Positions 16,696 through 64,000 of a DNA stretch of 64,000 nucleotides are shown here, one piece after another (position 1 is the first letter of the stretch; each line of letters opens with the position of its first letter). Below the pieces are notes generated by a model. The model did not search any database. It had not been told where the DNA came from and saw only the letters and a list, made by a program, of their open reading frames with translations. The position numbers and the translations under genes were made by a program. The stretch is from positions 147,588 through 211,587 of the IMG/VR virus record IMGVR_UViG_3300042289_000986. One strand, given 5' to 3'.

Positions 16696-17574
16696 ATGAA
16701 AAATTACACCTTTGCGTGGGAAATTCAAACTTTATTAGAGCAGTTTGTTTCGGCTTTTAATGATGTAATCATTAAAAGATATGATAAAAACAAAAATGCT
16801 ATCGCTCCAACGAGCGGTTTTAAAGTTAGATATATTTATGCACCAAAACAAAGGGTAATAAATAGTCTAACAACACCCGCACCGGGTGGAATTACTGCAC
16901 CTGTCATTGCTGTTAATATAACAAGTATTTCAAGAGACAATAGTCGCGTGTTTAACAAACATGAAGGGTTTGATGTTGCTTATGTACCCAACGATGGAAG
17001 CGGAACATACGTAAAAAATATACACCAGCCAGTTCCAATTAATATTAGCGTCAATATGACAATATTGACAAAATATCAATCGGATATGGATCAAATTTTA
17101 ACTAATTTTATTCCATATTGTGATCCTTATGTTATTATTTCTTGGAAATTACCAGCAGTATCTAAATCGTCTATTCCATATGAAATAAGATCAGAAATTT
17201 TATGGAGCGGAAATGTTAATTTAAACTATCCAACTGATATATCTCCAACTCAAGCCTTTCGTCTAACAGCAGATACAAGTTTTACAATTAAAGGTTGGCT
17301 GTTTAAAAAGATGGATGAAACTATCAATAAAATTTACACAATACAATCTGATTATTACGATGGAAGGTTATTGGTACAAGATCCTGCAAAATCTCTCATA
17401 CAAAGTTTTGAAGATGTTTTCGGTCCTTGGGAAAATTACCCAGGTACAGAACTTCCACCAGAAGAAATATCTGAACTTCCTCCATTAATTGATGATAATA
17501 TCTCAAATGCATTAATAGCATTCGACGGAGCAATATTAGTTGATATTGAAGGGAACATTTTGATAAATATATAA
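16696..17574 (+). CDS. gp15: Tail sheath stabiliser/tail completion protein (T4 gp15-like) with C-terminal extension
   Basis: FVSAFNDV, YAPKQR, PVPINISVNMTILTKYQSDMDQILTNFIPY, FTIKGWLF. Confidence 0.82.
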   Translation: MKNYTFAWEIQTLLEQFVSAFNDVIIKRYDKNKNAIAPTSGFKVRYIYAPKQRVINSLTTPAPGGITAPVIAVNITSISRDNSRVFNKHEGFDVAYVPNDGSGTYVKNIHQPVPINISVNMTILTKYQSDMDQILTNFIPYCDPYVIISWKLPAVSKSSIPYEIRSEILWSGNVNLNYPTDISPTQAFRLTADTSFTIKGWLFKKMDETINKIYTIQSDYYDGRLLVQDPAKSLIQSFEDVFGPWENYPGTELPPEEISELPPLIDDNISNALIAFDGAILVDIEGNILINI

Positions 17575-17580
17575 TAATAT

Positions 17581-19470
17581 ATGGCACAAAGGAATTTTAC
17601 ACAATTTAGTCCAAGAACTTTTCCTTTAACTGGTGATTATGTCGTTGGTTATAAAAATGATGGTTCAGAAGAAATGCGAACAACCCTTCAGAACATTATT
17701 GATTTAGTTTATAACTCAGAACCAAGAAACTCAAGTGGATTTAGTATTGTTAAAGCCAATTCTTCATTTTGGGCTTATAATGGAACAGATTTAAAACAAC
17801 TTTCTGGTAATTGGCAAAGTACATTCAACACAGTATGCTCTTTATCTACTCTTTGGGATGCACAAGCAGAATTTATTGACTTAACTAATTTTGTAAGCTC
17901 TAATTCTGCTAATTGGGAATATCAAGGAACAGATATTAAAGCCTTAACGGCAAATTGGCAATCAACTTATATCTCAGTTCAAAATAATGGAGGAACCACT
18001 TGGGCTTATAATGGAACAGATGTTAAACAATTAACAGGTAATTGGCAAACAACATATTCAATTGTTAGCAGTAATTCTGCTTTATGGAACTTGGGTGGTT
18101 TCGGTTCTGGAGCAACAGGCGCAACTGGCGCAACAGGTGTCGGAGTAACTGGTGCTACTGGAACACAGGGTCCAATTGGTTCTATCGGACCAACGGGCGC
18201 AGCAGGACCATCTACTTCATATTATGAATTTAAAGCAGATGTTAATGCAACAAATACACCACCAAATGCTGGTACTATTAGATGGAATAATTTAACACAG
18301 TTAAGTGCAACACAAATTCATACAAGTCATTTAACTGATACCTTTCTTGATGTTGATATATTTTTAGCCTTACTTAAAGAAAATGATACATTAATTATTC
18401 AAGATAGAAATAATTCTGCAAATTATCAAAGATGGAGAGTTAATGCAGCACCAATTGTAGCTGATAATAGTTTTATTACATTTCCAGTTACTTTAATAAA
18501 TTCAACAACAACATTTACTAGTAATCAATCTTTAATTTTAGCAGTAGTATCAGCAGGTATAGCTGGACCTACTGGTCCAACTGGACCAACTGGAGCAGGA
18601 CAAACTGGAGCCACAGGACCAACAGGAGCTACTGGTTCAAATTTTAATTATACATCAATTACATTAAATAGAACACTTTCATCGAATGCTGGTTATATTT
18701 TTGATACAACAAGTAGTCCATTAACTGCAACATTACCTTTAAGTCCCGCAATTGGTGATTTTATTAATATAACAGCAACGATTCAACCAGGAAATCTATT
18801 AACTATCGATAGAAATGGTAGTAATATAAATTCTTCTGCTAGTGCTTTAGGTGTTGATATATCAAGTAATTTTTCTTTGGTTTACACAACATCATCTATT
18901 GGATGGAGGTTTATTCCATATTCAGGATTAACAAACCCAACTATTAAAATTTATAAAGCTGTTTGGAATACTCTTCTTACAAATTTAACTGGTACTAGTA
19001 GAATACCATTTACAACAACAGTTGTTAATACAGATCCAGAAATATTTGGTGGAATTACGAATCCTGGCATTTTAGGAGCACAATACATTACCATCAAAAA
19101 AACTGGTTATTATATGATTAATTCTAACCTTCACTTGTATGATTTACAAAACGGTTTGCAATTAATGGTTTCACTTTGGAAAAATGAACCTTCTACTGGA
19201 TACGCAACACCAGTAAAAGTCCAATCAATCGTAGATTTTCAAAGTGGAACAGTTTCACAAGACCAAATTTTATTTGGTAATGCGTTGTTAAACGTAACTC
19301 AAGATGATACTAGAATTTGGTTACAAGTTGAACACAATGGAACAAGTTTAGTTCCACCGATACCTAATGGTGGACCATTCCCATCTCTTAGAGACGTTTT
19401 AGTTGATCCTGCTCCACCAAACCAAACAACTTCAACACCACCAGATATTATCATAACAAAATTAGCATAA
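17581..19470 (+). CDS. Mosaic fibre protein (W-x-Y-x-GTD repeats, collagen segments, gp9/10-like domain, C1q/BclA-like tip)
   Basis: Three WAYNGTDLKQLSGNWQST-type repeats, G-X-T triplets, TLPLSPAIGDFI...LTIDRNG...GW module, KKTGYYMI. Confidence 0.7.
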   Translation: MAQRNFTQFSPRTFPLTGDYVVGYKNDGSEEMRTTLQNIIDLVYNSEPRNSSGFSIVKANSSFWAYNGTDLKQLSGNWQSTFNTVCSLSTLWDAQAEFIDLTNFVSSNSANWEYQGTDIKALTANWQSTYISVQNNGGTTWAYNGTDVKQLTGNWQTTYSIVSSNSALWNLGGFGSGATGATGATGVGVTGATGTQGPIGSIGPTGAAGPSTSYYEFKADVNATNTPPNAGTIRWNNLTQLSATQIHTSHLTDTFLDVDIFLALLKENDTLIIQDRNNSANYQRWRVNAAPIVADNSFITFPVTLINSTTTFTSNQSLILAVVSAGIAGPTGPTGPTGAGQTGATGPTGATGSNFNYTSITLNRTLSSNAGYIFDTTSSPLTATLPLSPAIGDFINITATIQPGNLLTIDRNGSNINSSASALGVDISSNFSLVYTTSSIGWRFIPYSGLTNPTIKIYKAVWNTLLTNLTGTSRIPFTTTVVNTDPEIFGGITNPGILGAQYITIKKTGYYMINSNLHLYDLQNGLQLMVSLWKNEPSTGYATPVKVQSIVDFQSGTVSQDQILFGNALLNVTQDDTRIWLQVEHNGTSLVPPIPNGGPFPSLRDVLVDPAPPNQTTSTPPDIIITKLA

Positions 19471-19479
19471 ATAAAAAAT

Positions 19480-20583
19480 ATGATTACACTTTCAAATTTA
19501 TATCCAATACAAAACATAGGTTTTACTGGACCTACTGGTGGAATCGGACCAACAGGTGCTCAAGGAAACACTGGTAACATTGGGCCAACTGGATCGCAAG
19601 GAAACACTGGTTTAATTGGTCCAACAGGTGCTCAAGGAAATACTGGTTTAATTGGTCCAACAGGTGCTCAAGGAAATACTGGTTTAATTGGACCAACAGG
19701 AACACAAGGAAATACTGGTATAGTAGGACCAACAGGAACACAAGGAAATACTGGCTTAACAGGACCAACTGGTGCAGGAAATACAGGATCAACAGGACCA
19801 ACTGGTATTCAAGGAAACACAGGTGAAACTGGTCCAACGGGTGCTCAAGGAAATACTGGTCCAACTGGTATTCAAGGAAACACAGGTATAATGGGTCCAA
19901 CTGGATCGCAAGGAAACACAGGAGCAACTGGAGCAGGAACAACAGGACCAACTGGTGCAACTGGCACAACATTTGATTATGTATCAATAGAAACAAATAA
20001 TACGCTTTTAAGTTCTAACGAAGGTTTTATTTTTAATACATACACATCACCAATCACCGCAACACTTCCATTAAATCCATTAACTGGTGCATTTATTAAT
20101 ATTACATTTGAAAAATACAGTTCAAATAATTTAACAATTGAAAGAAATGGAAGTAATATCGATGGTGTTGCTGAAGATTTAATTTGTGATGTATCAGGAA
20201 ACTTTTCTTTAATTTATACAAATATTGTAGTTGGTTGGAAATTTATTCCATATTCAGGATTAACATTTGCACCAGCAACTCTAACATTAGATACAGTTAC
20301 TACAAGTAGATCTTTTGAATTAACAGATAGTAGTGAATTTATCACTGCTAATTCTAATAATGCAATTACATTAACTATTCCAGATGATAATTCTGTTAAT
20401 TTTACCAACGGAACACAAATTAGTATACTTCGTTTAAATACAGGAACAGTTGCATTATCTGCTGCAAACGGAGTAACATTAAGAAGTGCAGAAAATAAAC
20501 GCAGCATAAGAGCACAAAATTCTGTTGCTACTGTTGTTAAATTATCTGCCAATGATTGGAGTCTTTTTGGAGATATATCATAA
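19480..20583 (+). CDS. Collagen-like fibre protein
   Basis: Long G-X-Y run (GPT/GAQ/GNT) followed by a domain paralogous to the one in 17581..19470. Confidence 0.75.
19525..19965 (+). repeat. Collagen-coding tandem repeats (36-bp [12 protein letters not shown] units)
   Basis: Near-identical ggtccaacaggtgctcaaggaaatactggtttaatt units. Confidence 0.85.
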
Positions 20584-22503: not shown

Positions 22504-22505
22504 TT

Positions 22506-22868: not shown

Positions 22869-24320
22869 ATGGCTTTATTATCTGAAAAATATCCAATTAC
22901 TCAGTCTACAGGACCAACAGGTTCAACAGGAGCAACTGGTGCTGGCCAAACTGGTGCTACTGGAAACACTGGTATAGTAGGACCAACTGGAGCACAAGGA
23001 AATACTGGTGATATTGGACCAACAGGCTCTCAAGGAAACACAGGTATAGTAGGCCCAACTGGAGCACAAGGAAATACTGGTGATATTGGACCAACAGGCT
23101 CTCAAGGAAACACAGGTATAGTAGGCCCAACTGGAGCACAAGGAAATACTGGCCAAACAGGTTCGCAAGGAAACACTGGCGCAACTGGTAATGATGGATC
23201 AACTGGTCCTACAGGTTCAGGAAACACAGGAGCAACAGGTCAAACTGGAGCACAAGGAAATACAGGTGATATCGGTCCAACTGGAGCACAAGGAAATACA
23301 GGCCAAACTGGTGCTCAAGGAAATACAGGCATAGTGGGTCCAACTGGAACACAAGGAAATACAGGTGCAACAGGATCCACTGGTTTAGCAGGAGACAAAT
23401 ATACTACAACATCAACTACTAATACAAACATAGCCACAGGGTCAAAAACATTCACTGTTGATAGTGGTCTTGCTTATAGTATAGGACAATCTGTAATAGT
23501 TTCTTTTGATTCTTCTAATAAAATGGAAGGATCTGTTACAAGTTATTCTGGTACAACATTGATTGTAGATGTAACAACAATTACAGGTTCTGGAACATAT
23601 AATAGTTGGAGCGTAAGCTTGTCTGGAGCACCTGGACCCGCTGGTTTAACAGGCGCAACGGGAGCCACTGGTACTAATGGTACGAATGGAACAACTGGAG
23701 CAACAGGTGCTACTGGTACGGATGGAACAACAGGCGCAACGGGAGCCACTGGTACTAATGGTACGAATGGAACAACTGGAGCAACAGGTGCTACTGGTAC
23801 GGATGGAACAACAGGCGCAACAGGTGCTACTGGTACGAATGGAACAAACGGATCAACTGGATCAACTGGAACAACAGGAACTACTGGTGATTCCGCTTGG
23901 AAAATATTTGATATGAGTTTTGATTACGGTGAATATGATGTAAATAACGTTGTTACAAATGCAATTATTAGCAATGCTATAGTCACAATTCCATCTTGTG
24001 TCTTAATGGATAATACCAGCAATACTCATGCAAGCGCAAACGTAAACATAAGACTTGTAATCTTACAAGAGTATGGAGGAATTACAAACATGACATATGA
24101 TATACTTGCATATTCTGGAGGAAGTCCAACTGTTTATACTCCAACACTAACACAATTTACAACAAATGGACCCAATAATGCTGCTACAGAGCATGTTATT
24201 GGTAACTGGTTTACCCATAACATATCTGCACAAGGTACAACATTTCAACTAAGAGCATCTCGAAACGCTAATGGTTTTACAAGAATTAAAAAAGTTTATT
24301 TACAAGTTAGGAAAAACTGA
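22869..24320 (+). CDS. Collagen-like fibre protein
   Basis: Two G-X-T-rich collagen runs separated by a beta domain ([17 protein letters not shown]...[10 protein letters not shown]). Confidence 0.75.
22905..23890 (+). repeat. Collagen-coding repeats including 63-bp and 81-bp direct duplications
   Basis: [21 protein letters not shown] units at about 22970-23150; 81-bp unit at 23649 and 23730. Confidence 0.8.
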
Positions 24321-24332: not shown

Positions 24333-24548
24333 ATGGCATATTTTGATACAGAATTAAATGAAGCATGGGCATGGTTTGCGGTAAACTGGGAATTGTGGAT
24401 AAATTTAAATACATCACTAACTGATGGTTTAAAATTTGTGTTTGATAATACTGGTGGACCATCTGGACCGCATAAAGAAACACATTGGCAGTGGGTTAGA
24501 AATAATAGAGAAGAATTATTAAATTTATACAATTCTTTAAAGAACTAA
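24333..24548 (+). CDS. Small Trp-rich hypothetical protein
   Basis: 71-aa ORF following a fibre gene. Confidence 0.5.
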   Translation: MAYFDTELNEAWAWFAVNWELWINLNTSLTDGLKFVFDNTGGPSGPHKETHWQWVRNNREELLNLYNSLKN

Positions 24549-29251: not shown

Positions 29252-29252
29252 T

Positions 29253-33883: not shown

Positions 33884-33884
33884 A

Positions 33885-39234: not shown

Positions 39235-39780
39235 ATGGCAAACACTTATATTCACACATTACCAGATGTTTTAGCAACTGATCCTAATGCATATACTATT
39301 TTAGATTATGAAAATCAATTTGAAGAATATGTAACAGCAAAAGTTACTCTTGCATCTTTAGCTAATTTTACAAACAATACATTTTTAAATAGTACACCAT
39401 ATTTAAATAGTCTTTCTGCTACAACATACGTAGAAAACAATAGCGCAAACATTCAAGGAATTTCAAATGTCGTAAATTCGTTTAGTTCAAACAGTATTAA
39501 TGTTAATACTTTTGTTAATAGTAATAGTTCAAATATACAATCTGTTTATACTCATTATAATTCACAAAGTGCTAATTTTGCGACTAGAAACTATGTCAAT
39601 GGCGGGTTTTTACCGCTGTCTGGTGGAGATGTTATTGGTGAATTGTTTGCTACACAATATGGAGTAGGAAACACAGTAATTGTCGATGGAACGTTGGGTA
39701 CGGTTGTTAGAAAAATGCAAATATTTGATATAAATGGCGCTTCTATAGGATTTATCCCAATTTATAATTCTATAACTTAA
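39235..39780 (+). CDS. Short fibre-like structural protein
   Basis: N/S repeats and ATRNYVNGGFLPLSGG motif shared with the other fibre genes. Confidence 0.6.
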   Translation: MANTYIHTLPDVLATDPNAYTILDYENQFEEYVTAKVTLASLANFTNNTFLNSTPYLNSLSATTYVENNSANIQGISNVVNSFSSNSINVNTFVNSNSSNIQSVYTHYNSQSANFATRNYVNGGFLPLSGGDVIGELFATQYGVGNTVIVDGTLGTVVRKMQIFDINGASIGFIPIYNSIT

Positions 39781-54028: not shown

Positions 54029-57000
54029 ATGGCTGACTCATTTAGCATAACCCATACAGGCAATTGGCCTAATGAAACATATCAAATTGTTCCAAACTAT
54101 GATGCTATTAGCCCAGATTTTGGGTATGTCATTTTTCAAAATAATTTTAAATATTTTAACACGCCAATTAAAAGCGTTGACTCTAGATTATTAACAAATG
54201 TTTTTAGTTACAAGAACACTGTCACGGCACTAGGTCCCAAAAACAATCCTTTAGAAAATAATCAGTTAGAAGAAGATTATTATCAAATGTCAGTTTTTAA
54301 TAATACTTTTTTCACGTTTTCTCCATCTGCATTAAGATTGATAGATGCTGGTCCTACATTTAATTATTTTCAAATTGATTTAGATAACCCAGAAGGTTTT
54401 ACAGAATTTCATTCTTATATATTATACCCTTTTTCTTTATATCTAAGGCCAATTAGTGCTAAAAAAATTAATGATAATAGTTTTGAATTTGTAACATCAG
54501 CCGTATTATTAAGTGCTCAATCATTTTATTATTTAACAACCACTGGTGATGTCGATGCTTATATCAACCACTTAAATTATAAACCAAAATATAGAAATTT
54601 ACCAACCAATATTAATTTAAATTACAGCATAAGTGGGTTTGAATTTTATGCTGATAGACAACTTCCACAAATATATTCTTCTCAAATTTATAATTTTGAT
54701 AGGAATGCAATGCTTTTAAACAATCCAGTAAACATAAGACCAGATTATACATCTTTTAATTTTGATGTTATATATCCTCCATTTACTTTTCAAGCAGGGT
54801 TTCCAGAAGAACAACAATATGCTGGAATAGCTCAAGAAAATCCAGAAAATTATCGATATGTCAACGGTTTTACTTCTGCTTACATTTCTCGTTATGATCC
54901 TAGAATTTCTTCAATAGAAACATTTCAATTAGTGCAAAGCTCTTTAAATGAGCTTTCTCTTGATAATATTTCTAATTGTATATTAAGGTGTGAATTAAAT
55001 GTTTCTAATTCTAATTTAAAAACTTTTATATACAAATATAGAAATAATATAGGTAATTCAATTCCATTGGTTTCGGCTGTAACAAATACAAATTTGGGTA
55101 TTCGATATGCTGCTGATTACGGTAGAATTTTAAACACATCGGTACATTCTAATATTTTTTCATTTAAAGTAGGGACAGAATTTCAAAATGTTCAATCTTT
55201 AAGTGGTTTTAAAATTGCTTCTAACGTGCAAAATTTTGATACCGCTGTTTGGAATTTAAAATATCCACCACATTATTATTCATATAAAACATATTTTGAT
55301 GCAAATTCTTTAGGCTTTAATAAAAACAGTGATACGTCTTATTTAAATTTTTATTTATCAAGTCAGATTATTTCAGAAGATGATTTAAATTGTGTTTTTA
55401 AAAATGTATTAACGACAGATTTTAATACACTGGTTTTGGATTTAACATCCTATGCTACAAAAGATTCAATTAAATTTACTCCTATAAATGTCAATTTTGC
55501 CTCAAGAGATATTTCTTTATTTAGAGTTGTTTTATCTTCAATAACTGCACAATATAGTCCAGATAATGTTAACTTTTTTGATTATAATTTAAACTCTACA
55601 CCTTGGATAAATGCAGCATCCGCGCAATTTTTCAAAATTTATTATAATAAACAATATGGAGAAATGGATTTTGTATTAAATCCATGTTTAAGCACATCAA
55701 TTGGTACAAACATTGATTCAAAATATAATATCAAGAAAGATTTCGCTAAAGGATCTATACAAACCATAGATACTGATTTATTTTTAACAGTATTGGATGA
55801 AAAAGAAAATCAAATTGATTTGACAGTAAAATCAATAACATCCATGAATGAATTTCCTTTTAGAGATTTAACAAATACAGTTATAAGCTGGAATGTTAGC
55901 CCATCTTCAAATTTAGTATCAATTAATGCTATTGACTCTGATGGAAAATTTCTTCAAAAAATAACACCGAACCAACCTGTATCGTTTGATTTTAATACCT
56001 ACACTGTACGTGTATCTGGTTATGCAAAGGACACTACAACGATTACGTTTTCTTCACAATTTTGGGGATTATTTGATAGTATCCAAACAAACCAATCACT
56101 TTTTAACATATACAAAAATAAAAAATTTCAAATTGGATTGTTGAATCCAGTTTTTAATAATTTCGATACTAAACAATTTAGATTGACAGCTTTTTTGGAA
56201 TATGAAGGTCAAAAATTTGATATTCCAAAAACATTTAATGATGAAGATGTTTACATGTATTGGACTTGGAAGCATGATGAAGATTTTGATGATAGATTTA
56301 TTCCAGTAAATGTTTATGATAAAAATTTAACCGCACAATATCAATATGGTCAATCGGGACTAGCAACAGTTTTAAGTTCCATTTATGTTGAAGTTAAAAA
56401 CAAGTATGACATGGATCTTATTTCGGACCCATCTACTCCTTTTTCTCACGAAATAACATTTTATTTGTTTTCTAATATTTCTGTGCCGCCTGTATCGGGA
56501 CAGTTTTCTTTAACATTAGATGCATATCCAGCAAAAAGTGTTTTTAATACTGATTTTAGAACAACTTATAACGGATTTCCTAATGTTACTGTATCAGATA
56601 CAAGAAATAATCAATATGTTATTACAAGACCAGATAGTGATAATAACAATTTTGTATTTTTTGCCAATACTGATATTTTACCAACTTTAAGTGCTCAAAG
56701 TTTTGCTTGGTTAGCTTCGAGTGATAATGGGACGTTATCCGCTTTATCATCCACAAAATTTTCAGATATTTCGGCTTTTAGATATAGAATATCAAATCCA
56801 AACATTAAAGTAACTACCATAACATTATCAGCTATAAAAGCATTAATACCAAATTGGACAGAAAGATTTGATACACAAACTAAAATCACCATTTATACAG
56901 AACCTTCTGCTATATTTTTTGATCCTTTAAAATTTACAATCTATCCTCCTTTTATGTGGGGTCTTAGTGGTAGATATGTGAAACTCTTACAAGACAATGA

Positions 57001-60000
57001 TTATACATTAGCTGCGAATCCGACAGCCTATGCAAATACTATTTCTGAAACTCATGGGTTTTACATATCTGCCAATAAAGTTTATTTTGATAGTTATAAA
57101 GTTTATTCTGGTAATGATTTAACATACGTCGATACTATTACATCAAAATTTGAATATGTAGAAATACCGTTTAGAACCGAATTTTTCCAAAATACGGGAT
57201 TAAGAATAACTTTAGCAAGTTTTGGTGAAAAATATCCAGAATATAATGGTTTTACATACCAAACATTATCAGGAAGTAGTATTGTAACTTTACCATTTAA
57301 TAATTTTGCTTTTACTATTCCCTTTAGTTCTACAGTACCAGTTTCAGCAAAATTTACACAATCTCCAAAATTAAAACAATACGATACACTTTATTTGACG
57401 TTTAGTTCAACCATCACATCAATTGATATTGATGAAAATAGAATTATTACGGTTGATCAATTTTTTACTGGAGAGGGGGGAAAACCTCTTTCTGGATTTC
57501 CAACACAAAATCTTCAAGAAATTTTATCAGGCAATGTAATAGTTTATACTCTTTCTTCTCCAACATGGAAAGTAAATCAATTTATTCCAGCCCTACAAGG
57601 AAGATATCAATTATTTATTTTGGCTGTTGGAGATCCTGCACAACCTCTTAATATTAGCAAATACAAATATAATAGTTTAAATTTATCTGCATCGGGAAAC
57701 ATGCCAGTATGGATACCACCATCTACATTTGATTTGTATCCAGTAACACCATTAACCGCAAATTGCATAGCATATTGGAATTTTAATGAAGTAAGCGGTA
57801 ATCGAATTGATTCAACTGGAAATGGCTACAATCTAATGTTGTCGTCTATCCCATCTATAAGCTCACTACCACTAACTAGTATTGGTTTTATTGGATCTCG
57901 ATCTCTTTCAGCTTCTGTTACTGGTGTGTTTTTACAAACAACAGGAATAAATTTTGAAGGAGATTGGTCAATTTCATATTGGCAAAAATTAAATGTTCCC
58001 GAATCAGAAGTAGAAAGAGTAGATAATTTTATTACAAAATCTTCGGAAGGAAATAGTATTAATCCATTAAGTGGAATTATGATTACAACATCTCCAATGA
58101 TGATTTATGAAAATTATCCTCTTTATGAGCAAGCAGCAATTTATAACGGACCTTATCCAGAACCTTATAAATGGAATCATATTGTTTTTTCGGCCAAAAA
58201 TAAATTGTTGAGCGTTTGGATCAATAGTGTTAAGGTTGTAGATGAATTATTTTTATCTGATGCTTTGTTAGATTATATGTCAATTTCTAACAATTACCCA
58301 TTTAGAATTAATGGCCAAAATCGTTCTGTAGAAATAGACGAAATGGGTATTTGGTATAGAGCATTGGAAGGTCCCGATATATATGCTTTATATAACTATA
58401 AATTAACCTATCCGTTTCCTTACACTTTACCAGAAGCATATATTGAAGAGAGACAATTGTGGAAAGTTATAAACCAACCAGTAACTGCTAATCCACTAAC
58501 ATTAGTTGCATATAGTACAAGCGTTATACCAGAAGTTTATGTTTCGACATATTTTGCTTTAACAGGACAAGAAATTTTTATTCAATTTGAAACACCTGAA
58601 AATAATCAAAATCTTTATATTACATCTTATCGTACAAATTTTGGAGATCTTTCAACTTCTGAATTTGATCAACCGAATGAAATTGGATCAAATATTGAAT
58701 ATTCTGACATCAACGATACGGTAAGACACAGTTATAAAGAACCAGGCATCTATAATCTTTCATTTGATGTAATTTATAATACGGGAGAAATTAAAAAGTT
58801 TAACTTAGAATCTCCAATTACAATTTATACAGAATGGCCAAACTACGATCAACAAAAAATAAGATTTTTAAATGAAACAGTTTTAAATTTTGGTGATGAA
58901 TTAGAAAATACATATACATTAGATCAAATAGACATTCAACCTAATGAGTTTGGGGATGTTGATATATTTAATACCAGTATAACAAGATTGTATAATAACT
59001 TTGAATATTTAAAATTCAATTCACAAACAATTAATACAAATTCTCCAACCTTATTTTATGGTTGGTTAGGAACCGAAGAAAACAATACTGCAAGAGGTAT
59101 TCAGTGGAACACAAAAGATTATGGATTTTTCGAATGGGATAAACCATATTTGGCATCACTTAGAGTTACTTTTAATGAAAATTTAAATAATGTTGAATAC
59201 AACAAAAAATTCTTTTCAAATATTATTTGTGTTTCGGAAACAAAAGACCACTTATTAGTTATTGATGGAACAGAATTTAGAGCTTTTTCTTCTGGAAAAA
59301 TTCCGCAAGAAAGATTTTTTGAAAATATTGAAGATATACGTCCACTAATTCCAAGTCCAGTTAGTATTGATTCTTTTACAGATTCAGACAACTCTTCTTA
59401 TGTTTATGTTGCGGATAATGTTAGAAATAGAATCTATAAATTTAATTTAGATTTTTCTTTTGTTCCACAAATTAATGTTCAATTAGTTGTTGGAAACTTT
59501 GGAAAAAGAGAGGAACCTAATAAATTTAATGCACCTTCAAAAATAATTTATGCTAATGATTTTGTTTATGTTCTTGATTATAATAATCAATGCGTAAAAC
59601 AATTTACTTCTGACTTAAATTGGACTTTTACATATTTTGACGATGCTTTTGATAACGAACAACCCGAAGCTTTAGCAGTCCACCCAAACATTGAAATATC
59701 ATTTTTATATGTTTTGACAAACCAAAGAAGAGTATTTATTTTTGATCAGTTTAATACTGTACCGTTTCAAATTATAGATTTACCAGAAACTTTTGATTCA
59801 CAAGAATTAATGGAAATTAGTTTTGATGAAGCAGGAGAATTTTTCTATGTTTTAACAAGAAAAAATATATACAAATATACTATAAGTGGAACTTTTATCG
59901 GAGATGTTGACATACCAAACAGTAGTGAATTAAATTATAACTATATCAAACAATCACAATTCCACTCTATGTTGATATGTTCTGATAGATGTATTTTAAA

Positions 60001-60637
60001 AATACAGGATTTAATTCAACTATATAGAATCGGTGATGGATTAGAACAACGCTATTGGTCACTAGATCAGCTTCTTTTAAATAGAAATGAATTTGCAGAT
60101 GATACAAATTATAATCGCTGCATGATTCGTTTAGTGCAAAACATTAAAAACTTTAGAAATATTTTTAATTCTAAATTTGTCGTTGCAACTGAACAACTTC
60201 CATCAGGAACCGTTTCTTATTTTACATTAGTTCCAATTTCTACTGACGAACTTCCTAGTTTTTCTAATGATATCGAAAATGAAAATATTGGAGTGGGGGT
60301 AAATGAACTTCACGTTCCACCTGTATTAAATAGAGAATTCAAAAAAATATACGAATCTTTGGATATTTTAAGAGAATATCTCACAGTTTCAGATATTCGA
60401 ATTCAATCGGGACTTAATAAAGGATGTTTTTCTCCTTTCTGTTGGTCGTGGAGAGCAATGTCTTGTTACAATTTAAGTTTACCCGTTATTCGAATTTGCA
60501 ATATTAACCCAATTACATACATCGAACTAGAAAAAGATTTTCCTGTTAAATATGCACCAACAACTATATGGGGAGAAGCATCAGCTTCTTGTTGCAAGGA
60601 TTTTAATCAAATAGCAAATCCTTTATATCAAGAATAA
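54029..60637 (+). CDS. Very large (2202 aa) baseplate/tail protein with LamG-like, PKD-like and NHL-like domains
   Basis: IAYWNFNE...WNHIVF...IDEMGIWYRAL; HSYKEPGIYNL; VYVADNVRNRIYKF, FNAPS, VYVLDYNN. Confidence 0.65.
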   Translation: MADSFSITHTGNWPNETYQIVPNYDAISPDFGYVIFQNNFKYFNTPIKSVDSRLLTNVFSYKNTVTALGPKNNPLENNQLEEDYYQMSVFNNTFFTFSPSALRLIDAGPTFNYFQIDLDNPEGFTEFHSYILYPFSLYLRPISAKKINDNSFEFVTSAVLLSAQSFYYLTTTGDVDAYINHLNYKPKYRNLPTNINLNYSISGFEFYADRQLPQIYSSQIYNFDRNAMLLNNPVNIRPDYTSFNFDVIYPPFTFQAGFPEEQQYAGIAQENPENYRYVNGFTSAYISRYDPRISSIETFQLVQSSLNELSLDNISNCILRCELNVSNSNLKTFIYKYRNNIGNSIPLVSAVTNTNLGIRYAADYGRILNTSVHSNIFSFKVGTEFQNVQSLSGFKIASNVQNFDTAVWNLKYPPHYYSYKTYFDANSLGFNKNSDTSYLNFYLSSQIISEDDLNCVFKNVLTTDFNTLVLDLTSYATKDSIKFTPINVNFASRDISLFRVVLSSITAQYSPDNVNFFDYNLNSTPWINAASAQFFKIYYNKQYGEMDFVLNPCLSTSIGTNIDSKYNIKKDFAKGSIQTIDTDLFLTVLDEKENQIDLTVKSITSMNEFPFRDLTNTVISWNVSPSSNLVSINAIDSDGKFLQKITPNQPVSFDFNTYTVRVSGYAKDTTTITFSSQFWGLFDSIQTNQSLFNIYKNKKFQIGLLNPVFNNFDTKQFRLTAFLEYEGQKFDIPKTFNDEDVYMYWTWKHDEDFDDRFIPVNVYDKNLTAQYQYGQSGLATVLSSIYVEVKNKYDMDLISDPSTPFSHEITFYLFSNISVPPVSGQFSLTLDAYPAKSVFNTDFRTTYNGFPNVTVSDTRNNQYVITRPDSDNNNFVFFANTDILPTLSAQSFAWLASSDNGTLSALSSTKFSDISAFRYRISNPNIKVTTITLSAIKALIPNWTERFDTQTKITIYTEPSAIFFDPLKFTIYPPFMWGLSGRYVKLLQDNDYTLAANPTAYANTISETHGFYISANKVYFDSYKVYSGNDLTYVDTITSKFEYVEIPFRTEFFQNTGLRITLASFGEKYPEYNGFTYQTLSGSSIVTLPFNNFAFTIPFSSTVPVSAKFTQSPKLKQYDTLYLTFSSTITSIDIDENRIITVDQFFTGEGGKPLSGFPTQNLQEILSGNVIVYTLSSPTWKVNQFIPALQGRYQLFILAVGDPAQPLNISKYKYNSLNLSASGNMPVWIPPSTFDLYPVTPLTANCIAYWNFNEVSGNRIDSTGNGYNLMLSSIPSISSLPLTSIGFIGSRSLSASVTGVFLQTTGINFEGDWSISYWQKLNVPESEVERVDNFITKSSEGNSINPLSGIMITTSPMMIYENYPLYEQAAIYNGPYPEPYKWNHIVFSAKNKLLSVWINSVKVVDELFLSDALLDYMSISNNYPFRINGQNRSVEIDEMGIWYRALEGPDIYALYNYKLTYPFPYTLPEAYIEERQLWKVINQPVTANPLTLVAYSTSVIPEVYVSTYFALTGQEIFIQFETPENNQNLYITSYRTNFGDLSTSEFDQPNEIGSNIEYSDINDTVRHSYKEPGIYNLSFDVIYNTGEIKKFNLESPITIYTEWPNYDQQKIRFLNETVLNFGDELENTYTLDQIDIQPNEFGDVDIFNTSITRLYNNFEYLKFNSQTINTNSPTLFYGWLGTEENNTARGIQWNTKDYGFFEWDKPYLASLRVTFNENLNNVEYNKKFFSNIICVSETKDHLLVIDGTEFRAFSSGKIPQERFFENIEDIRPLIPSPVSIDSFTDSDNSSYVYVADNVRNRIYKFNLDFSFVPQINVQLVVGNFGKREEPNKFNAPSKIIYANDFVYVLDYNNQCVKQFTSDLNWTFTYFDDAFDNEQPEALAVHPNIEISFLYVLTNQRRVFIFDQFNTVPFQIIDLPETFDSQELMEISFDEAGEFFYVLTRKNIYKYTISGTFIGDVDIPNSSELNYNYIKQSQFHSMLICSDRCILKIQDLIQLYRIGDGLEQRYWSLDQLLLNRNEFADDTNYNRCMIRLVQNIKNFRNIFNSKFVVATEQLPSGTVSYFTLVPISTDELPSFSNDIENENIGVGVNELHVPPVLNREFKKIYESLDILREYLTVSDIRIQSGLNKGCFSPFCWSWRAMSCYNLSLPVIRICNINPITYIELEKDFPVKYAPTTIWGEASASCCKDFNQIANPLYQE

Positions 60638-61092: not shown

Positions 61093-61105
61093 ATATTAAA
61101 AGATC

Positions 61106-64000
61106 ATGGCAGAGATTAGAACAAAATTAATAACACAATTGCCATTAGGAATTTTTTTGGATGGTGAAGAAATTCTCCCAATGCAACAACAAGGAGTTAC
61201 AAGAAAACTCCAAACAAAAGACATCATTCTTTATACCAAAAAACAAGATTATGCTACTTGGGTAAATCAAGCATCAACTAATCTCCTCACAATAGATCTT
61301 TCTTCGCGTTTTATAAGATTATACAACCAACAACCAAATGACAATTTAAATCCTGAATTTTTTATTGGTGAATTTGACACTTTAACAAATACTACAGAAT
61401 TAACTAGTTTAACAGGATATACTTTTTATTATAACGAGTCATCAAATAATTTTGTATTCACGGCTCACACATCAAGTTCAAATCATTCAAGGGTTTTAAC
61501 TGCATATTATATTGATCAAAATGCTATTACATATATTAATAATCTTTCAACATCTAATGTTTTAAGTGCTAAACAGATATTTGTTACAGATTCAATAACT
61601 ATTTCTGCAAATACAAATTCTGATGGTTTGTATATTGTTCAAAACGGAACTGGTAATGCAGTAGAAGTTTTTGATGAAATCAATGACACAACACCATTTG
61701 TAATCAACAGTTTAGGAAATGTTGGAATTAAAACGTCAAATCCTCTAATTGACCTGACGATCAATGGTAATTTAAGTTCAAATTCAAATTTAAGTGCCAG
61801 AAATGTACACGTAACCAATTCGGTTATAGTTTCAGCTAACACAAATTCTAGTGGCCTATATGTTGTTCAAAACGGAACTGGTAATGCAGTAGAAGTTTTT
61901 GATGAAATCAATGACACAACACCATTTGTAATCAACAGTTTAGGAAATGTTGGAATTAAAACCACAAACCCTCTGGTTGATCTAACAATTAATGGTAATT
62001 TAAGTTCCAATTCAAATTTAAGTGCCAGAAATGTATTTGTTACAGATTCAATAACTATTTCTGCAAATACAAATTCTGATGGTTTGTATATTGTTCAAAA
62101 CGGAACTGGTAATGCAGTAGAAGTTTTTGATGAAATCAATGACACAACACCATTTGTTATTAATAATATAGGAAATATTGGAATTAAAACTTCAAATCCT
62201 CTAATTGACCTGACGATCAATGGTAATTTAAGTTCAAATTCAAATTTAAGTGCAACCAATATACATCTTTTAAACTCTCTCGGTATTAATGTTAATAATC
62301 CAATGGAAAGATTAACCTTATTAGGTAATCTTTCCACAAACGGTAATATTATAGGAACTAATAATTTACATTTATCAGGTGTAATGACTATACCGGGTGG
62401 CGCGGGTGGAGATAGTCGTAACTGGGTTTCTAACTTTAACAACGTGTGCGCTTTATCTGCAAGATGGGAGAGCATTTATAGCTATTGGAACCCATTAACA
62501 GCAAATACAGCACAAGTCGTATCTCATGTTAATGCAAATTCTGCAAACTGGAATTCGACATTTTCAACATGGAATGCTACAAGTGCCTTTGAACTTTCTG
62601 CAAGAAATTTTATAAATCAAAATAATAGAAATATTGTTAGCAATTATAGTCATTATAATGCTAATAGTGGTTTATTTGCAACATATGCATATGCCAATGG
62701 GTTTTTACCTATTTCTGGGGGAGCCGTAACTGGAAACGTAACCTTATGTGCAAATTTAATTGTGGTTGGTGCTTTAACGGCACAAAAATTTACCGTTCTG
62801 GAAACTCAAACTCTTCCAACCACGGCAAGTCAATTAACAGTTTCATTAGATGGAAACATTGGAACATCATTAACTGTTAATCAAGACGTTTTAGTTGGAA
62901 GAAATATGTTTCTTTCCGGTTACTTTTTAGTTCCAGGTGGCGCGGGTGGAGATAGTCGTAACTGGGTTTCTAACTTTAACAACGTGTGCGCTTTATCTGC
63001 AAGATGGGAGAGCATTTATAGCTATTGGAACCCATTAACAGCAAATACAGCACATTCAACAACTTATGTAAACAATACAAGTTCAACAATTAATAGCGTC
63101 AATTCTTATGTTAATACTAATCGTATTAATTTAAGTGAAGTGGCAACAACTGTAAATTCAAATAGTTCTATTTGGATATTTAATGGTGGAAATACGGGTG
63201 CGGTTACAGTAGGAACAAACAACAATACAAATCTTTCTCTTGAAACCAACAATATAACAAGAATGACGGTGTTGAGCGGTGGAAATATCGGTATCAACCA
63301 ATTAACTCCAACCAGCAGACTCCATGTGACGGACAATTCTTCAAACCCCACAGTTCTTATTACACAAGCTGGTGCTGGTGAAGGATTAAGAATTACACAA
63401 TTAGGAACGGGATATGCTTTATTGGTAGAAGATGTTGTATCAGACACAACACCATTTGTCATTGATGCTGACGGAAATATTGGTGTGAGCACTGCTTCAC
63501 CAACAAATAAAATAACTATTTTAAGTAATTCTAATAATATTAACGATTATCCAATTAGAATTAATAATAATTCAAACAATTATGCATCCGGTATTGGCGC
63601 ATATGGCATATCAAACAGAATTGGCACATCCACAAATATTGATTATACTTTAGACATAGGAAACGACATTTTCTTTAAAAATAATAATTCAAATACAGTT
63701 GTTATTAAATCTGGTGGAAATGTGGGTATATCTACAACAACACCAAATGAAAGATTAACAGTTTTTGGAAATGTTAGTGCAAATGGAATAATTTACGATT
63801 CGACAAGTAGTTCAACCGATTGGAACATATCTTTCAACAGAAGTACATTTTTAACAACAGCAAGTAGTGATTGGAACACATCTTTCAACAGAAGTACAAT
63901 CTTGGCAGCAGCAAGTAGTGATTGGAACACATCTTTCAACAGAAGTACAATCTTGGCAGCAGCAAGTAGTGATTGGAACACATCTTTCAACAGAAGTACA
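61106..64000 (+). CDS. Partial long tail-fibre protein (runs off the window end)
   Basis: Not in the ORF track (no stop in window). Manual translation: MAEIRTKLITQLP...; repeated GNVGIxTxxP beta-fibre motifs and N/S/W repeats. Confidence 0.8.
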   Translation, partial: MAEIRTKLITQLPLGIFLDGEEILPMQQQGVTRKLQTKDIILYTKKQDYATWVNQASTNLLTIDLSSRFIRLYNQQPNDNLNPEFFIGEFDTLTNTTELTSLTGYTFYYNESSNNFVFTAHTSSSNHSRVLTAYYIDQNAITYINNLSTSNVLSAKQIFVTDSITISANTNSDGLYIVQNGTGNAVEVFDEINDTTPFVINSLGNVGIKTSNPLIDLTINGNLSSNSNLSARNVHVTNSVIVSANTNSSGLYVVQNGTGNAVEVFDEINDTTPFVINSLGNVGIKTTNPLVDLTINGNLSSNSNLSARNVFVTDSITISANTNSDGLYIVQNGTGNAVEVFDEINDTTPFVINNIGNIGIKTSNPLIDLTINGNLSSNSNLSATNIHLLNSLGINVNNPMERLTLLGNLSTNGNIIGTNNLHLSGVMTIPGGAGGDSRNWVSNFNNVCALSARWESIYSYWNPLTANTAQVVSHVNANSANWNSTFSTWNATSAFELSARNFINQNNRNIVSNYSHYNANSGLFATYAYANGFLPISGGAVTGNVTLCANLIVVGALTAQKFTVLETQTLPTTASQLTVSLDGNIGTSLTVNQDVLVGRNMFLSGYFLVPGGAGGDSRNWVSNFNNVCALSARWESIYSYWNPLTANTAHSTTYVNNTSSTINSVNSYVNTNRINLSEVATTVNSNSSIWIFNGGNTGAVTVGTNNNTNLSLETNNITRMTVLSGGNIGINQLTPTSRLHVTDNSSNPTVLITQAGAGEGLRITQLGTGYALLVEDVVSDTTPFVIDADGNIGVSTASPTNKITILSNSNNINDYPIRINNNSNNYASGIGAYGISNRIGTSTNIDYTLDIGNDIFFKNNNSNTVVIKSGGNVGISTTTPNERLTVFGNVSANGIIYDSTSSSTDWNISFNRSTFLTTASSDWNTSFNRSTILAAASSDWNTSFNRSTILAAASSDWNTSFNRST
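61580..62255 (+). repeat. Three 228-bp (76-aa) tandem coding repeats
   Basis: caaaacggaactggtaatgcagtag recurs at 61640, 61868 and 62096. Confidence 0.9.
62396..63054 (+). repeat. Identical 119-bp direct repeat pair (62396-62514 and 62936-63054)
   Basis: No mismatch seen by eye; 540 bp apart, in frame. Confidence 0.9.
63809..64000 (+). repeat. 51-bp (17-aa) tandem coding repeat ASSDWNTSFNRSTILAA
   Basis: Units start at 63860, 63911 and 63962, with a degenerate copy upstream. Confidence 0.9.

What the first reader, a model, noticed from the sequence alone, without database searches (positions are those of the whole stretch)
16696..64000. L-S-[A/G/S] tripeptide concentrated in outer virion proteins: candidate sequon of a phage-encoded virion glycosylation system
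Seen: by eye I count about 18 LS[A/G/S] in the 2202-aa protein (LLSAQ, SLSGF, TLSAL, GLSGR, NLSAS, PLSGI...), about 9 in the 1346-aa protein, about 10 in 29253..31148, about 8 in 31145..33883, 5 in the 276-aa 28421 protein, and single copies in gp23 (FLSGN) and gp13 (SLSGG). Many lie in non-repetitive, unrelated domains. I found none in UvsW, primase, gp47, gp44, gp55, portal or gp6, although all contain LS dipeptides. A rough composition estimate predicts only about 3 in the 2202-aa protein. The window also encodes at least 8 GT-like genes. Established: bacterial O-glycosylation systems use short Ser/Thr sequons, and some phages glycosylate their virions. Inference: the motif was selected repeatedly on exposed virion proteins as an acceptor for a glycan coat made by the phage GTs.
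Basis: partly seen in the sequence, partly recalled or inferred. Interest (0 to 1): 0.85.

Follow-up and report, generated by a model that had tools for sequence, protein, structure and literature searches.

The report
Leu-Ser-small tripeptide in phage fibre proteins
The excess of Leu-Ser-(Ala/Gly/Ser) in this uncultured T4-like phage's fibre and outer baseplate proteins is real and specific to its lineage, but it looks like a structural habit of beta-strand ends and fibre repeats rather than a sugar-attachment signal, and the phage's fibre-linked glycosyltransferase more plausibly acts on neighbouring collagen-like (Gly-X-Thr) fibres.

Summary
Observation confirmed.

- **Size of the effect.** The excess is 3.5-5.5x over composition. 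It survives dipeptide-preserving shuffles (2202-aa protein: 18 vs 6.7, P<1/3000).
- **Level.** It is at the protein level, since the codons are diverse.
- **Controls.** It is absent from this phage's enzymes and core virion proteins, and from the T4 and P-SSM2 fibre and giant baseplate proteins (ratio about 0.9-1.0).

Interpretation only partly supported.

- **Fibres.** The motif is one variant of a 14-residue repeat (…[N/L/T]-S-[A/S/G]-N-W-x-S-V-Y…) or part of LSGG.
- **The two giant proteins.** Most sites sit in alignment columns that are conserved across large homologue families. Each position varies by residue class: L/I/V/F; S/T/N/D/K/C; G/A/S. AlphaFold models place them mostly at strand ends and tight turns of tandem Ig/FN3-like domains and of a PKD + NHL-propeller protein.
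- **Lineage-private sites.** These occur only at about the dipeptide-level expectation.
- **Other phages.** Large proteins next to the candidate glycosyltransferase in other phages are mostly not enriched (median 1.18x).

Six GT-like genes are supported, not eight. One is a GT2+TPR enzyme built like C. difficile SgtA. Across IMG/VR it is tightly linked to collagen-like G-X-T genes (45/78 loci vs 5/72 controls). That points to a different and better-precedented acceptor. I put the sequon reading at about 0.1.

The parts
54029..60637 (+). 2202-aa distal baseplate protein. It has 18 LS[AGS], all between aa 161 and 1347. Residues about 440-1130 are modelled as tandem Ig/FN3/MG-like beta-sandwich domains.
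   Evidence: statistics. (16 homologues, each with 7-20 motifs against 1.6-4.5 expected). (AlphaFold model plus Foldseek).
49953..53993 (+). 1346-aa protein in the gp7 position, just after gp25 and gp6. It contains a PKD domain, a six-bladed NHL-type propeller, and a clade-specific beta-meander insertion (aa about 720-990). It has 9 LS[AGS].
   Evidence: (93 homologues, 3.3x, hot columns). (model pLDDT 80.5; NHL / streptogramin-lyase-like fold).
28421..36869 (-). Four tail-fibre-like genes (276, 631, 912 and 994 aa) built largely of a 14-residue repeat N-S-[N/L/T]-S-[A/S/G]-N-W-[N/D]-S-V-Y-S-T-[W/V]. They hold 28 LS[AGS] in total.
   Evidence: repeat register and spacings in multiples of 14. 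(tail-fibre-like neighbours in the ESM Atlas).
39235..39780 (+). 181-aa fibre-like protein with the same 14-residue repeat and an LPLSGG motif.
17581..19470 (+). 629-aa protein with short collagen-like runs plus copies of the fibre repeat. It has 3 LS[AGS].
19480..20583 (+). Collagen-like fibre protein with 46 G-X-Y triplets, 27 of them with Thr at Y.
22869..24320 (+). Collagen-like fibre protein with 80 G-X-Y triplets, 48 of them with Thr at Y.
26570..27472 (-). Collagen-like fibre protein with 22 G-X-Y triplets, 14 of them with Thr at Y. Its C-terminal domain is paralogous to 27686-28381.
24537..25646 (-). GT2 (GT-A) glycosyltransferase with a DAD motif and a TPR-like C-terminal half. It has the architecture of SgtA and GmaR.
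   Evidence: Synteny.
25643..26539 (-). 298-aa GT9-like (heptosyltransferase-like) protein with a conserved C-x2-C-x14-C-x14-C motif. Its stop overlaps the start of the GT2-TPR gene.
   Evidence: ESM Atlas features only. (conserved Cys). No Pfam, PHROG, NCBIfam or PDB sequence hit.
14184..14918 (+). Glyco_tranf_2_5 glycosyltransferase-like protein.
1139..3481 (-). Three tandem paralogous GT2-like genes (268, 266 and 254 aa) next to gp47, gp55 and UvsW.
   Evidence: 391-1161 is not a detectable paralogue.

Best explanation
LS[AGS] is a structural sequence habit, not a modification signal. It takes the form 'aliphatic residue, small hydroxyl residue, small residue' in the beta-rich and fibrous peripheral virion proteins of one uncultured clade of T4-like phages.

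In the fibres, Leu is one of three residues (N/L/T) allowed at one position of a 14-residue repeat. That repeat's core is S-[A/S/G]-N-W-x-S-V-Y. Further copies come from the LSGG motif.

In the two giant baseplate proteins, the motif mostly marks strand ends, strand starts and tight turns. These lie in tandem Ig/FN3-like domains, in NHL propeller blades and in a beta-meander. The excess there is carried mainly by positions inherited within each family, on top of family-wide dipeptide preferences (LS, S-small and L-x-small, each about 1.4-1.6x).

Shown: the statistics, the repeat register, the column conservation and class-wise substitution, and the secondary-structure context. Inferred: that packing and turn geometry is the cause.

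Separately (inferred): the phage probably does glycosylate part of its virion. The likeliest acceptor is Thr at the Y position of its G-X-T collagen-like fibres. The likeliest enzyme is the SgtA-like GT2-TPR, possibly together with the adjacent GT9-like enzyme.
For: Fibres:
- In 35 W-x-S-x-Y units, position -4 is N12/L10/T8, position -3 is S in 27, and position -2 is A/S/G in 29. Spacings are multiples of 14.
- There are five LSGG copies.

gp7-like family:
- All 93 homologues are enriched about 3.3x.
- 17 columns hold 343 of 554 motifs; the remainder is 211 vs 167 expected.
- At hot columns the residues are L/I/V/F, then S/T/N/D/C, then G (up to 92/93) or S/T/A, then an aromatic residue or N.

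2202-aa family:
- Enrichment holds in all 16 homologues.
- 15 of the window protein's 18 sites are shared with another lineage.
- Private sites are 39 vs 19.6, about the dipeptide-level expectation.
- Motif Ser is only moderately more conserved than other Ser (55% vs 40%) and is replaced by T, K, N, D and C.

Graded specificity: LS[AGS] 5.5x, LT[AGS] 2.4x, [IVFM]S[AGS] 2.0x. LC[AGS] is also enriched.

Models: both proteins are almost entirely beta. In confidently modelled regions, about 10 of 16 motifs lie at strand termini or adjacent turns.

There is no flanking consensus.

GT side:
- GT2 domain plus a DAD motif.
- The best solved relatives are GmaR and SunS.
- Homologues carry TPR Pfam domains.
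- SgtA is a 358-aa GT-A+TPR O-GlcNAc transferase that acts on Thr of the GPT collagen repeats of BclA3, which is encoded next to it (PMC7157674).
- G-X-T dominates the window's collagen-like proteins.
- 45/78 GT2-TPR loci carry a (GXY)>=6 ORF, against 5/72 control loci.
- In 28 of 59 distinct loci that ORF lies within 1.5 kb, and Thr is by far the commonest Y residue.
Against: - Three or more families with no detectable homology share the same tripeptide excess in one phage lineage. Analogous beta-rich proteins of T4 and P-SSM2 show none. A purely structural cause does not obviously predict that lineage specificity.
- Ser is favoured over Thr, although Thr has the higher beta-strand propensity.
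- After dipeptide-preserving shuffling the 2202-aa protein is still 2.7x enriched.
- Outside the repeat region the fibres still have roughly 10 sites against about 3.6 expected. This is a hand count.
- An unrelated 1168-aa protein in a relative (L085) has 15 vs 2.3.
- The 2202 model is of low confidence outside aa about 440-1130.
- The collagen-Thr acceptor is inferred from synteny and analogy only.
Confidence: 0.6

Rival explanations
1. L-S-[A/G/S] is an O-glycosylation sequon, or a strand-turn structural acceptor motif. It would be recognised in the cytoplasm by phage glycosyltransferases (the GT2-TPR and/or the GT9-like enzyme of the fibre gene block) and maintained by selection on exposed virion proteins.
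For: - The enrichment is robust and specific to peripheral proteins and to this lineage.
- It occurs in unrelated families.
- Motif density is kept at 4-6x in lineages that share only 0-5 sites.
- Substitutions at Ser columns are mostly polar or charged, implying exposure.
- Two GT genes are embedded in the fibre gene block. One is closest to the protein/peptide glycosyltransferases GmaR, SunS and ThuS.
- The GT9-like protein has a conserved four-Cys cluster. It is reminiscent of the iron finger of the autotransporter heptosyltransferases, which modify Ser on beta-helices (PMC4358343).
Against: - Ser is replaced by N, D, K, C or G in about 45% of homologue cells, and S/N/D are equally common at one hot column.
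- Private sites are not above the dipeptide-level background.
- Fibre copies are explained by the repeat.
- There is no extended consensus, and three residues carry too little information for specificity.
- There is no significant avoidance of the motif in non-target proteins.
- Large proteins adjacent to GT2-TPR homologues in other phages have a median ratio of 1.18, and only 4 of 55 are significant.
- The GT is linked to G-X-T collagen-like genes instead.
- No known sequon has this form (my recollection of the literature, not tested here).
Confidence: 0.1
2. The excess is a composition or repeat artefact with no biological content.
For: Part of the excess reduces to dipeptide preferences: the expectation for the 2202-aa protein rises from 2.7 to 6.7. 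The 994-aa fibre is not significant. The 1346-aa protein is marginal after dipeptide control (P=0.022).
Against: - The 2202-aa protein and three fibres remain significant after dipeptide-preserving shuffles.
- LSA and LSG rank first and second of 8000 tripeptides.
- BLAST finds no internal repeats in aa 1-1350 of the 2202-aa protein.
- Controls of similar composition and fold class sit at about 1.0.
Confidence: 0.05
3. The motif reflects a DNA-level signal (a favoured or avoided oligonucleotide, a methylation or restriction site) read through the genetic code.
For: None found.
Against: Motif codons are varied. Leu uses TTA, CTT, TTG and CTA. Ser uses both the AGY and TCN boxes. The third residue uses GCN, GGN, TCN and AGY. 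Proportions are close to each protein's overall codon usage.
Confidence: 0.01
4. The motif is a recognition element for some other factor acting on peripheral virion proteins. Examples would be a fibre-assembly chaperone or a different Ser-directed modification such as acylation or phosphorylation.
For: The same statistical specificity as for the sequon reading. A 129-aa ORF and other unknown ORFs sit in the fibre block.
Against: - No candidate enzyme or chaperone was identified.
- The same substitution pattern argues against it as against the sequon reading.
- There is no extended consensus.
Confidence: 0.05

Closest known systems
C. difficile SgtA / BclA3 (GT-A + TPR O-GlcNAc transferase acting on a collagen-like exosporium protein)
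   Same: The window GT (369 aa) has an N-terminal GT2/GT-A domain with a DxD motif and a TPR-like C-terminal half. It is encoded beside collagen-like proteins whose Y position is mostly Thr. That matches SgtA, which is 358 aa, is GT-A + TPR, and is encoded immediately upstream of bclA3 with its GPT repeats.
   Different: - Viral rather than clostridial.
- The direct sequence relationship to SgtA was not tested, because no SgtA sequence was available in the tools.
- TPR hits in the window protein itself fall below the Pfam cut-off.
- Activity and sugar are unknown.
- It says nothing in favour of LS[AGS] as the acceptor.
Listeria GmaR (flagellin O-GlcNAc transferase) and SunS/ThuS (peptide S/O-glycosyltransferases)
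   Same: These are the best solved-structure and NCBIfam matches of the GT2 domain: GmaR 7.5e-11, SunS 2.4e-8, TIGR04195 4e-10. They are cytoplasmic enzymes that glycosylate proteins or peptides rather than lipids.
   Different: Matches cover only the first ~95-195 residues (the GT-A half) and lie far below the family cut-offs (39 bits vs 350). No acceptor similarity was demonstrated.
Mycobacteriophage virion glycosylation (phage-encoded GTs decorating capsid and tail tube proteins)
   Same: Both involve phage-encoded GTs proposed or shown to decorate virion proteins. The literature was seen only through citing papers, so the details are my recollection.
   Different: In my recollection the acceptors there are Ser/Thr-rich C-terminal extensions, not a dispersed tripeptide. 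The phage lineage and the GT families are different. No homology was tested.
Bacterial autotransporter heptosyltransferases (TibC/AAH) modifying Ser on beta-helix adhesins
   Same: Both show cytoplasmic hyper-glycosylation of Ser on beta-rich surface proteins. The window's GT9-like protein has a conserved four-Cys cluster, like the TibC iron finger (PMC4358343).
   Different: - The window protein is 298 aa against about 406 aa, so it would lack the N-terminal beta-barrel.
- There is no sequence or profile match to any solved heptosyltransferase.
- The GT9 assignment rests on language-model features only.
Periodic fibre repeats of phage tail fibres / fibritin-like shafts
   Same: A 14-residue periodic repeat with conserved W, S, V/Y and small residues fills the shafts of four to six proteins. 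Structure neighbours are tail-fibre families.
   Different: There is no Pfam or PHROG match for these repeats. The fold (coiled coil or beta) was not determined.

Membership tests
Protein O-glycosylation sequon (generic) | Short motif over-represented on the exposed acceptor proteins | tested here: met
   3.5-5.5x in fibres and giant baseplate proteins; about 0.6-0.7x in enzymes and core virion proteins.
Protein O-glycosylation sequon (generic) | Acceptor hydroxyl residue maintained (Ser/Thr only) where the site is conserved | tested here: not met
   Ser columns carry N, D, K, C, G and Q in many homologues. One hot column is S34/N30/D24 and another is C55/S19.
Protein O-glycosylation sequon (generic) | Motif excess tracks presence of the transferase across genomes | tested here: inconclusive
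   T4 and P-SSM2 show no excess, and no T4-like isolate appears among the 12 isolate-phage records matching the GT2-TPR. Large proteins beside GT2-TPR homologues in other phages have a median ratio of 1.18. Whole contigs could not be fetched, so GT absence in enriched relatives is untested.
Protein O-glycosylation sequon (generic) | Glycan detected on the motif Ser | not testable with these tools
   Needs glycoproteomics.
Bacteroidota general O-glycosylation motif D-(S/T)-(A/I/L/V/M/T) | Asp immediately before the acceptor | tested here: not met
   Leu precedes the Ser by definition. The form of the motif is my recollection of the literature.
SgtA/GmaR-type GT-A + TPR protein O-GlcNAc transferases | N-terminal GT2/GT-A domain with DxD | tested here: met
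   PF00535 3e-10 and PF13704. D90-A-D92. GmaR and SunS are the best PDB hits.
SgtA/GmaR-type GT-A + TPR protein O-GlcNAc transferases | C-terminal TPR repeats | tested here: inconclusive
   TPR_14 E=0.0026 and TPR_2 E=0.033, both below the gathering scores. Several ~50%-identical homologues carry TPR Pfams.
SgtA/GmaR-type GT-A + TPR protein O-GlcNAc transferases | Gene adjacent to its collagen-like (G-X-T) substrate gene | tested here: met
   In the window the GT is flanked by collagen-like genes. 45/78 GT loci vs 5/72 control loci have a (GXY)>=6 ORF; in 28/59 distinct loci it lies within 1.5 kb.
SgtA/GmaR-type GT-A + TPR protein O-GlcNAc transferases | UDP-GlcNAc-dependent transfer to Thr/Ser of the substrate | not testable with these tools
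   An enzyme assay is needed.
BAHT (TibC/AAH) heptosyltransferases | GT-B / GT9-like catalytic core | tested here: inconclusive
   ESM Atlas neighbours carry PF01075. No Pfam, PHROG, NCBIfam or PDB sequence hit.
BAHT (TibC/AAH) heptosyltransferases | Four-Cys iron finger inserted in the C-lobe | tested here: inconclusive
   C246, C249, C264 and C279 are conserved in all 8 homologues. Equivalence to TibC Cys339/342/358/370 was not aligned.
BAHT (TibC/AAH) heptosyltransferases | N-terminal beta-barrel and dodecameric ring | not tested
   At 298 aa the protein is too short to hold the ~97-residue barrel. The oligomeric state is unknown.
Periodic fibre repeat | Regular period with position-specific conservation | tested here: met
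   35 units, spacings in multiples of 14, position-specific residues. Extensive cross-matches among six proteins.
NHL beta-propeller / PKD (1346-aa protein) | Fold match to solved NHL propellers and a PKD Pfam hit | tested here: met
   PF18911 and PF00801. Foldseek hits to Thin/TRIM2 NHL domains and virginiamycin B lyase, TM (target) 0.56-0.62.
Tandem Ig/FN3/MG-like array (2202-aa protein) | Fold match to multi-domain beta-sandwich chains | tested here: met
   Foldseek E down to 5e-12 against complement C5, alpha-2-macroglobulin, gp130 and fibronectin. The low global TM is expected for a flexible array. Model pLDDT is 58 overall and 70-90 in aa 440-1130.

The most novel reading that the evidence does not exclude
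The serines of L-S-[A/G/S] at strand-end turns of fibre and distal baseplate proteins are O-glycosylated in the cytoplasm. The enzymes would be the fibre-block pair: the SgtA/GmaR-like GT2-TPR plus the GT9-like protein with its four-Cys cluster. Glycosylation would be directed by a structural motif, comparable to the heptosylation of beta-helix autotransporters. It would give a whole uncultured clade of roughly 200-kb T4-like phages a glycan-coated adsorption apparatus.
Probability: 0.1. Interest if true: 0.85.

Novelty: new member of a known kind. Interest (0 to 1): 0.35.

Why it matters
If the motif were a sequon, it would be the first dispersed glycosylation signal described on a myovirus adsorption apparatus. 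It would also give a way to predict glycan-shielded phages from sequence alone. The evidence here favours a less dramatic reading: a lineage-specific structural sequence habit.

Two things remain useful.

- The excess is a clean, reproducible marker of the peripheral virion proteins of a large clade with no cultured member. The major capsid protein is only about 35% identical to those of isolates.
- The by-product finding is testable. An SgtA-like GT2-TPR gene is tightly linked to G-X-T collagen-like fibre genes in dozens of viral contigs. This is a better-founded candidate for phage fibre glycosylation.

Tried and rejected
- **DNA k-mer cause.** Rejected, because the codons are diverse.
- **Internal repeats in the 2202-aa protein.** BLAST finds none in aa 1-1350.
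- **Shared domain between the 2202 and gp7-like families.** hhalign gives probability 0.4%. Only a 15-residue 'W-x-F-x-x-L-S-G'-like stretch aligns.
- **Extended consensus around 68 non-repeat motif instances.** None was found beyond mild depletion of basic and aromatic residues at -1.
- **Solvent accessibility of motif serines.** Not possible, because model coordinates are not exposed to scripts. I used DSSP context and substitution spectra instead.
- **Checking that LPLSGG is a common tail-fibre motif.** tblastn of a 40-aa piece gave no match. One FLPLSGGTLTG example turned up in an unrelated locus. Otherwise this rests on my recollection.
- **Sequence and profile searches of the GT9-like protein against solved structures.** There was no heptosyltransferase hit. 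The profile picked up the methyltransferase domain that is fused in two homologues.
- **Contig-name overlap between GT2-TPR loci and gp7-like loci in IMG/VR.** Only the window's own contig is shared. The GT list is truncated at 80 of more than 553, so this is uninformative.
- **Isolate relatives for a with/without-GT comparison.** The gp7-like protein has no isolate homologue. The GT2-TPR occurs only in a few jumbo or megaphage records.
- **A wrong P-SSM2 region** was fetched first.
- **tRNA scan.** None found.

Full report
**What the window is.** It is the last 64 kb of a 211,587-bp IMG/VR contig. The genome is a T4-like myovirus of about 30% G+C. Its major capsid protein is only about 35% identical to the nearest isolates, which are cyanophages. 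Identified genes:
- gp47-like phosphoesterase, gp55-like sigma factor, UvsW, UvsY and a segE-like endonuclease;
- an endolysin and primase;
- gp15, several collagen-like proteins and a GT2 gene;
- portal and gp13;
- gp14, gp21, scaffold, gp44, gp25 and gp6.

The 1346-aa and 2202-aa genes follow gp25 and gp6. They therefore occupy the position of the distal baseplate proteins.

Against per-protein composition, the excess is 18 vs 2.7, 9 vs 2.2, 10 vs 1.8, 8 vs 2.7 and 5 vs 0.65.
- In the two giant proteins LSA and LSG are the two most over-represented of all 8000 tripeptides, and LSS is seventh. This disposes of the look-elsewhere objection.
- With dipeptide-preserving shuffles the 2202-aa protein is still 18 vs 6.7 (P<1/3000). 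Three fibres remain significant, the 1346-aa protein is marginal (P=0.022) and the 994-aa fibre is not significant.
- The codons used are varied, so the signal is at the protein level.
- Controls are flat. Window enzymes give 0.72x and window core virion proteins 0.58x. T4 baseplate and fibre proteins give 0.95x. P-SSM2 gp7 (5195 aa), gp8 and PSSM2_113 (2506 aa) give 0.88x.

The absence of the motif from UvsW, primase and the other enzymes is not informative in itself, because their summed expectation is about 2.7.

**Fibres.** Six proteins share a 14-residue repeat. Aligning 35 units on their Trp gives N-S-[N12/L10/T8]-S27-[A14/S8/G7]-N-W-[N/D]-S-V-Y-S-T-[W/V], with spacings in multiples of 14.
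- LS[AGS] is simply the Leu variant of one repeat position.
- Five more copies are LSGG (four of them in L-[P/A]-L-SGG).
- By a hand count, the non-repeat parts of the four fibres still hold about 10 sites against about 3.6 expected. Repeat collapsing therefore removes most of the fibre excess, but not all.
- The hydrophobic spacing 0, 3, 7, 10 would fit two heptads. I did not test the fold.

**The gp7-position protein.**
- It has 93 full-length homologues, all metagenomic, and all enriched about 3.3x.
- In an alignment, the 554 motifs fall in 132 columns. Seventeen columns hold 343 of them. The rest is 211 against 167 expected.
- At the hot columns each position varies by class, independently of the others. 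The first is L/I/V/F. The second is S/T/N/D, with one column C55/S19 and another S34/N30/D24. The third is a nearly invariant Gly, or S/T/A. The fourth is aromatic or Asn.
- The AlphaFold model (pLDDT 80.5) shows a PKD domain, a six-bladed NHL-type propeller and a beta-meander insertion.
- Of the window protein's nine motifs, four sit at strand C-termini or in a hairpin turn, each next to a one- to four-residue turn. One sits at a strand start, two in short helices, one in a loop and one in a low-confidence stretch.
- The insertion (aa about 720-990) is present in only 13 homologues. It resembles a Rhodobacter phage tail-fibre segment.

**The 2202-aa protein.**
- Sixteen homologues down to 26% identity all have 7-20 motifs against 1.6-4.5 expected.
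- Positions are partly conserved, with substitutions such as LVSS, LISS, MFSS, TLCAL, RLTAQ and KIKAR.
- Motif Ser is conserved in 55% of cells against 40% for other Ser. When replaced, it becomes T20, K15, N11, D8 or C7. That suggests exposed polar positions under only moderate constraint.
- Distant lineages share few sites (0-7) yet keep a high density. However, sites private to one lineage total 39 against 19.6 by composition. That factor of about 2 is roughly what dipeptide preferences alone give (6.7 vs 2.7). No selection on the tripeptide itself needs to be invoked for new sites. The remaining excess lies in inherited positions.
- The model is confident only for aa about 440-1130. There it is a string of Ig/FN3/macroglobulin-like sandwiches. 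Motifs in that region lie within strands or immediately before or after them.
- The two giant families are not detectably related.

**Breadth of the signal.**
- The specificity is graded: LS[AGS] 5.5x, LT[AGS] 2.4x and [IVFM]S[AGS] 2.0x, with LN and LD about 1. The families also show LC[AGS] enrichment.
- Flanking positions carry no consensus.
- Across 72 IMG/VR loci of the clade, gp7-like (3.3x), 2202-like (3.8x), a 60682-like family (2.9x) and gp13-like proteins (3.7x) are enriched. By contrast gp6 and the capsid protein are about 1.4x, the clamp loader 1.05x, the scaffold 0.6x and the protease 0.2x.
- This clade-wide, class-specific pattern in unrelated families, with Ser preferred over Thr, is the part I cannot fully explain by structure. 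It is the reason the sequon reading keeps a non-trivial probability.

**Glycosyltransferases.** Six have support:
- three tandem GT2-like paralogues at 1139-3481;
- a Glyco_tranf_2_5 protein at 14184-14918;
- a GT2 at 24537-25646;
- a GT9-like protein at 25643-26539, assigned from Atlas features only.

The last two lie on the minus strand in the same block as the collagen-like gene 26570-27472, the fibres and the portal. Co-transcription is my inference.

**The GT2-TPR enzyme.**
- Its best solved relatives are GmaR, SunS and ThuS, which are protein or peptide glycosyltransferases. Its best NCBIfam hit is SunS. Both matches are weak and confined to the first ~95-195 residues (the GT-A half).
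- It has a DAD motif.
- Its C-terminal half gives sub-threshold TPR hits. Homologues at about 50% identity carry TPR Pfams, and the family has more than 1500 members.
- This is the architecture and size of C. difficile SgtA. That enzyme is an O-GlcNAc transferase encoded next to bclA3, and it glycosylates Thr (and Ser) in the GPT collagen repeats (PMC7157674).

**Link to collagen-like genes.**
- The window's collagen-like proteins have Thr at the Y position in 27/46, 48/80 and 14/22 triplets.
- In IMG/VR, 45 of 78 GT2-TPR loci contain an ORF with at least six consecutive G-X-Y triplets, against 5 of 72 control loci.
- In 28 of 59 distinct loci that ORF is within 1.5 kb, and Thr is overwhelmingly the Y residue.
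- By contrast, 55 large proteins next to GT2-TPR homologues have a median LS[AGS] ratio of 1.18, with four outliers.

If this phage glycosylates its virion, the best-supported acceptor is the G-X-T collagen-like fibre, not LS[AGS].

**The GT9-like protein.** It has a conserved C-x2-C-x14-C-x14-C cluster. The cluster recalls the iron finger of the autotransporter heptosyltransferases (PMC4358343). No sequence-level link could be shown.

**Verdict.** My best explanation (confidence about 0.6) is a structural one: fibre-repeat and strand-end/turn positions inherited within families, plus family-wide dipeptide preferences. The sequon interpretation is not refuted, but several comparative tests count against it, and I put it at about 0.1. 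A better-founded glycosylation hypothesis emerged as a by-product: an SgtA-like GT2-TPR acting on G-X-T collagen-like fibres.

Noticed in passing
window 24537-25646 (-) with 19480-20583, 22869-24320, 26570-27472; loci L016-L093: The GT2-TPR gene is strongly linked to collagen-like G-X-T genes across viral contigs. 45/78 loci have such an ORF against 5/72 control loci, often the adjacent gene. This mirrors sgtA-bclA3 of C. difficile and is a candidate phage fibre glycosylation module.
   Followed up: partly
window 25643-26539 (-); L087:9173-10933, L092:7423-8970: The 298-aa GT9-like protein has an invariant C-x2-C-x14-C-x14-C cluster. In two distant homologues it is fused to an N-terminal SAM-methyltransferase domain. 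It has no Pfam, PHROG or PDB sequence match.
   Followed up: partly
window 1139-3481 (-): Three tandem paralogous GT2-like genes (24-31% identical to one another) sit next to gp47, gp55 and UvsW in the DNA-metabolism block. They could serve DNA hypermodification as well as any glycan. The target was not investigated.
   Followed up: no
window 49953-53993 (+), aa about 720-990: A beta-meander insertion is present in only 13 of 93 homologues. It resembles a tail-fibre segment of Rhodobacter phages RcapMu and RcWaterboi (about 26% identity), which suggests module exchange.
   Followed up: partly
L085:1659-5165 (-) and L039:3203-6340 (+): Large proteins have very strong LS[AGS] excess (15 vs 2.3 and 11 vs 2.8) but no BLAST similarity to any window protein. 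Both lie near GT2-TPR homologues in other phages.
   Followed up: partly
whole window: The clade has no cultured representative. The capsid protein is about 35% identical to isolates, and the gp7-like protein has about 100 metagenomic homologues but no isolate homologue. The host is unknown, and the window holds no tRNA genes.
   Followed up: partly
window 7345-7785 (+): A segE-like GIY-YIG homing endonuclease gene (PF19835, 2e-31) lies between the uvsY block and downstream small ORFs.
   Followed up: no
window 10230-10937 (+): A likely endolysin, with PG_binding_1 plus Peptidase_M15_4 domains.
   Followed up: no
window 62095-62475 (-) and 63106-63492 (-): Two small Leu-rich ORFs (14-20% Leu) share a 30-residue segment: the C-terminus of one matches the N-terminus of the other at 57% identity. 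This may be a split or duplicated gene near the contig end.
   Followed up: no
window 60682-61092 (+); loci L101-L172: The 136-aa ORF after the 2202-aa gene matches part of much longer proteins (mean about 700 aa) in related phages, and those are also about 2.9x enriched in LS[AGS]. The window copy may be a short version or a remnant.
   Followed up: no
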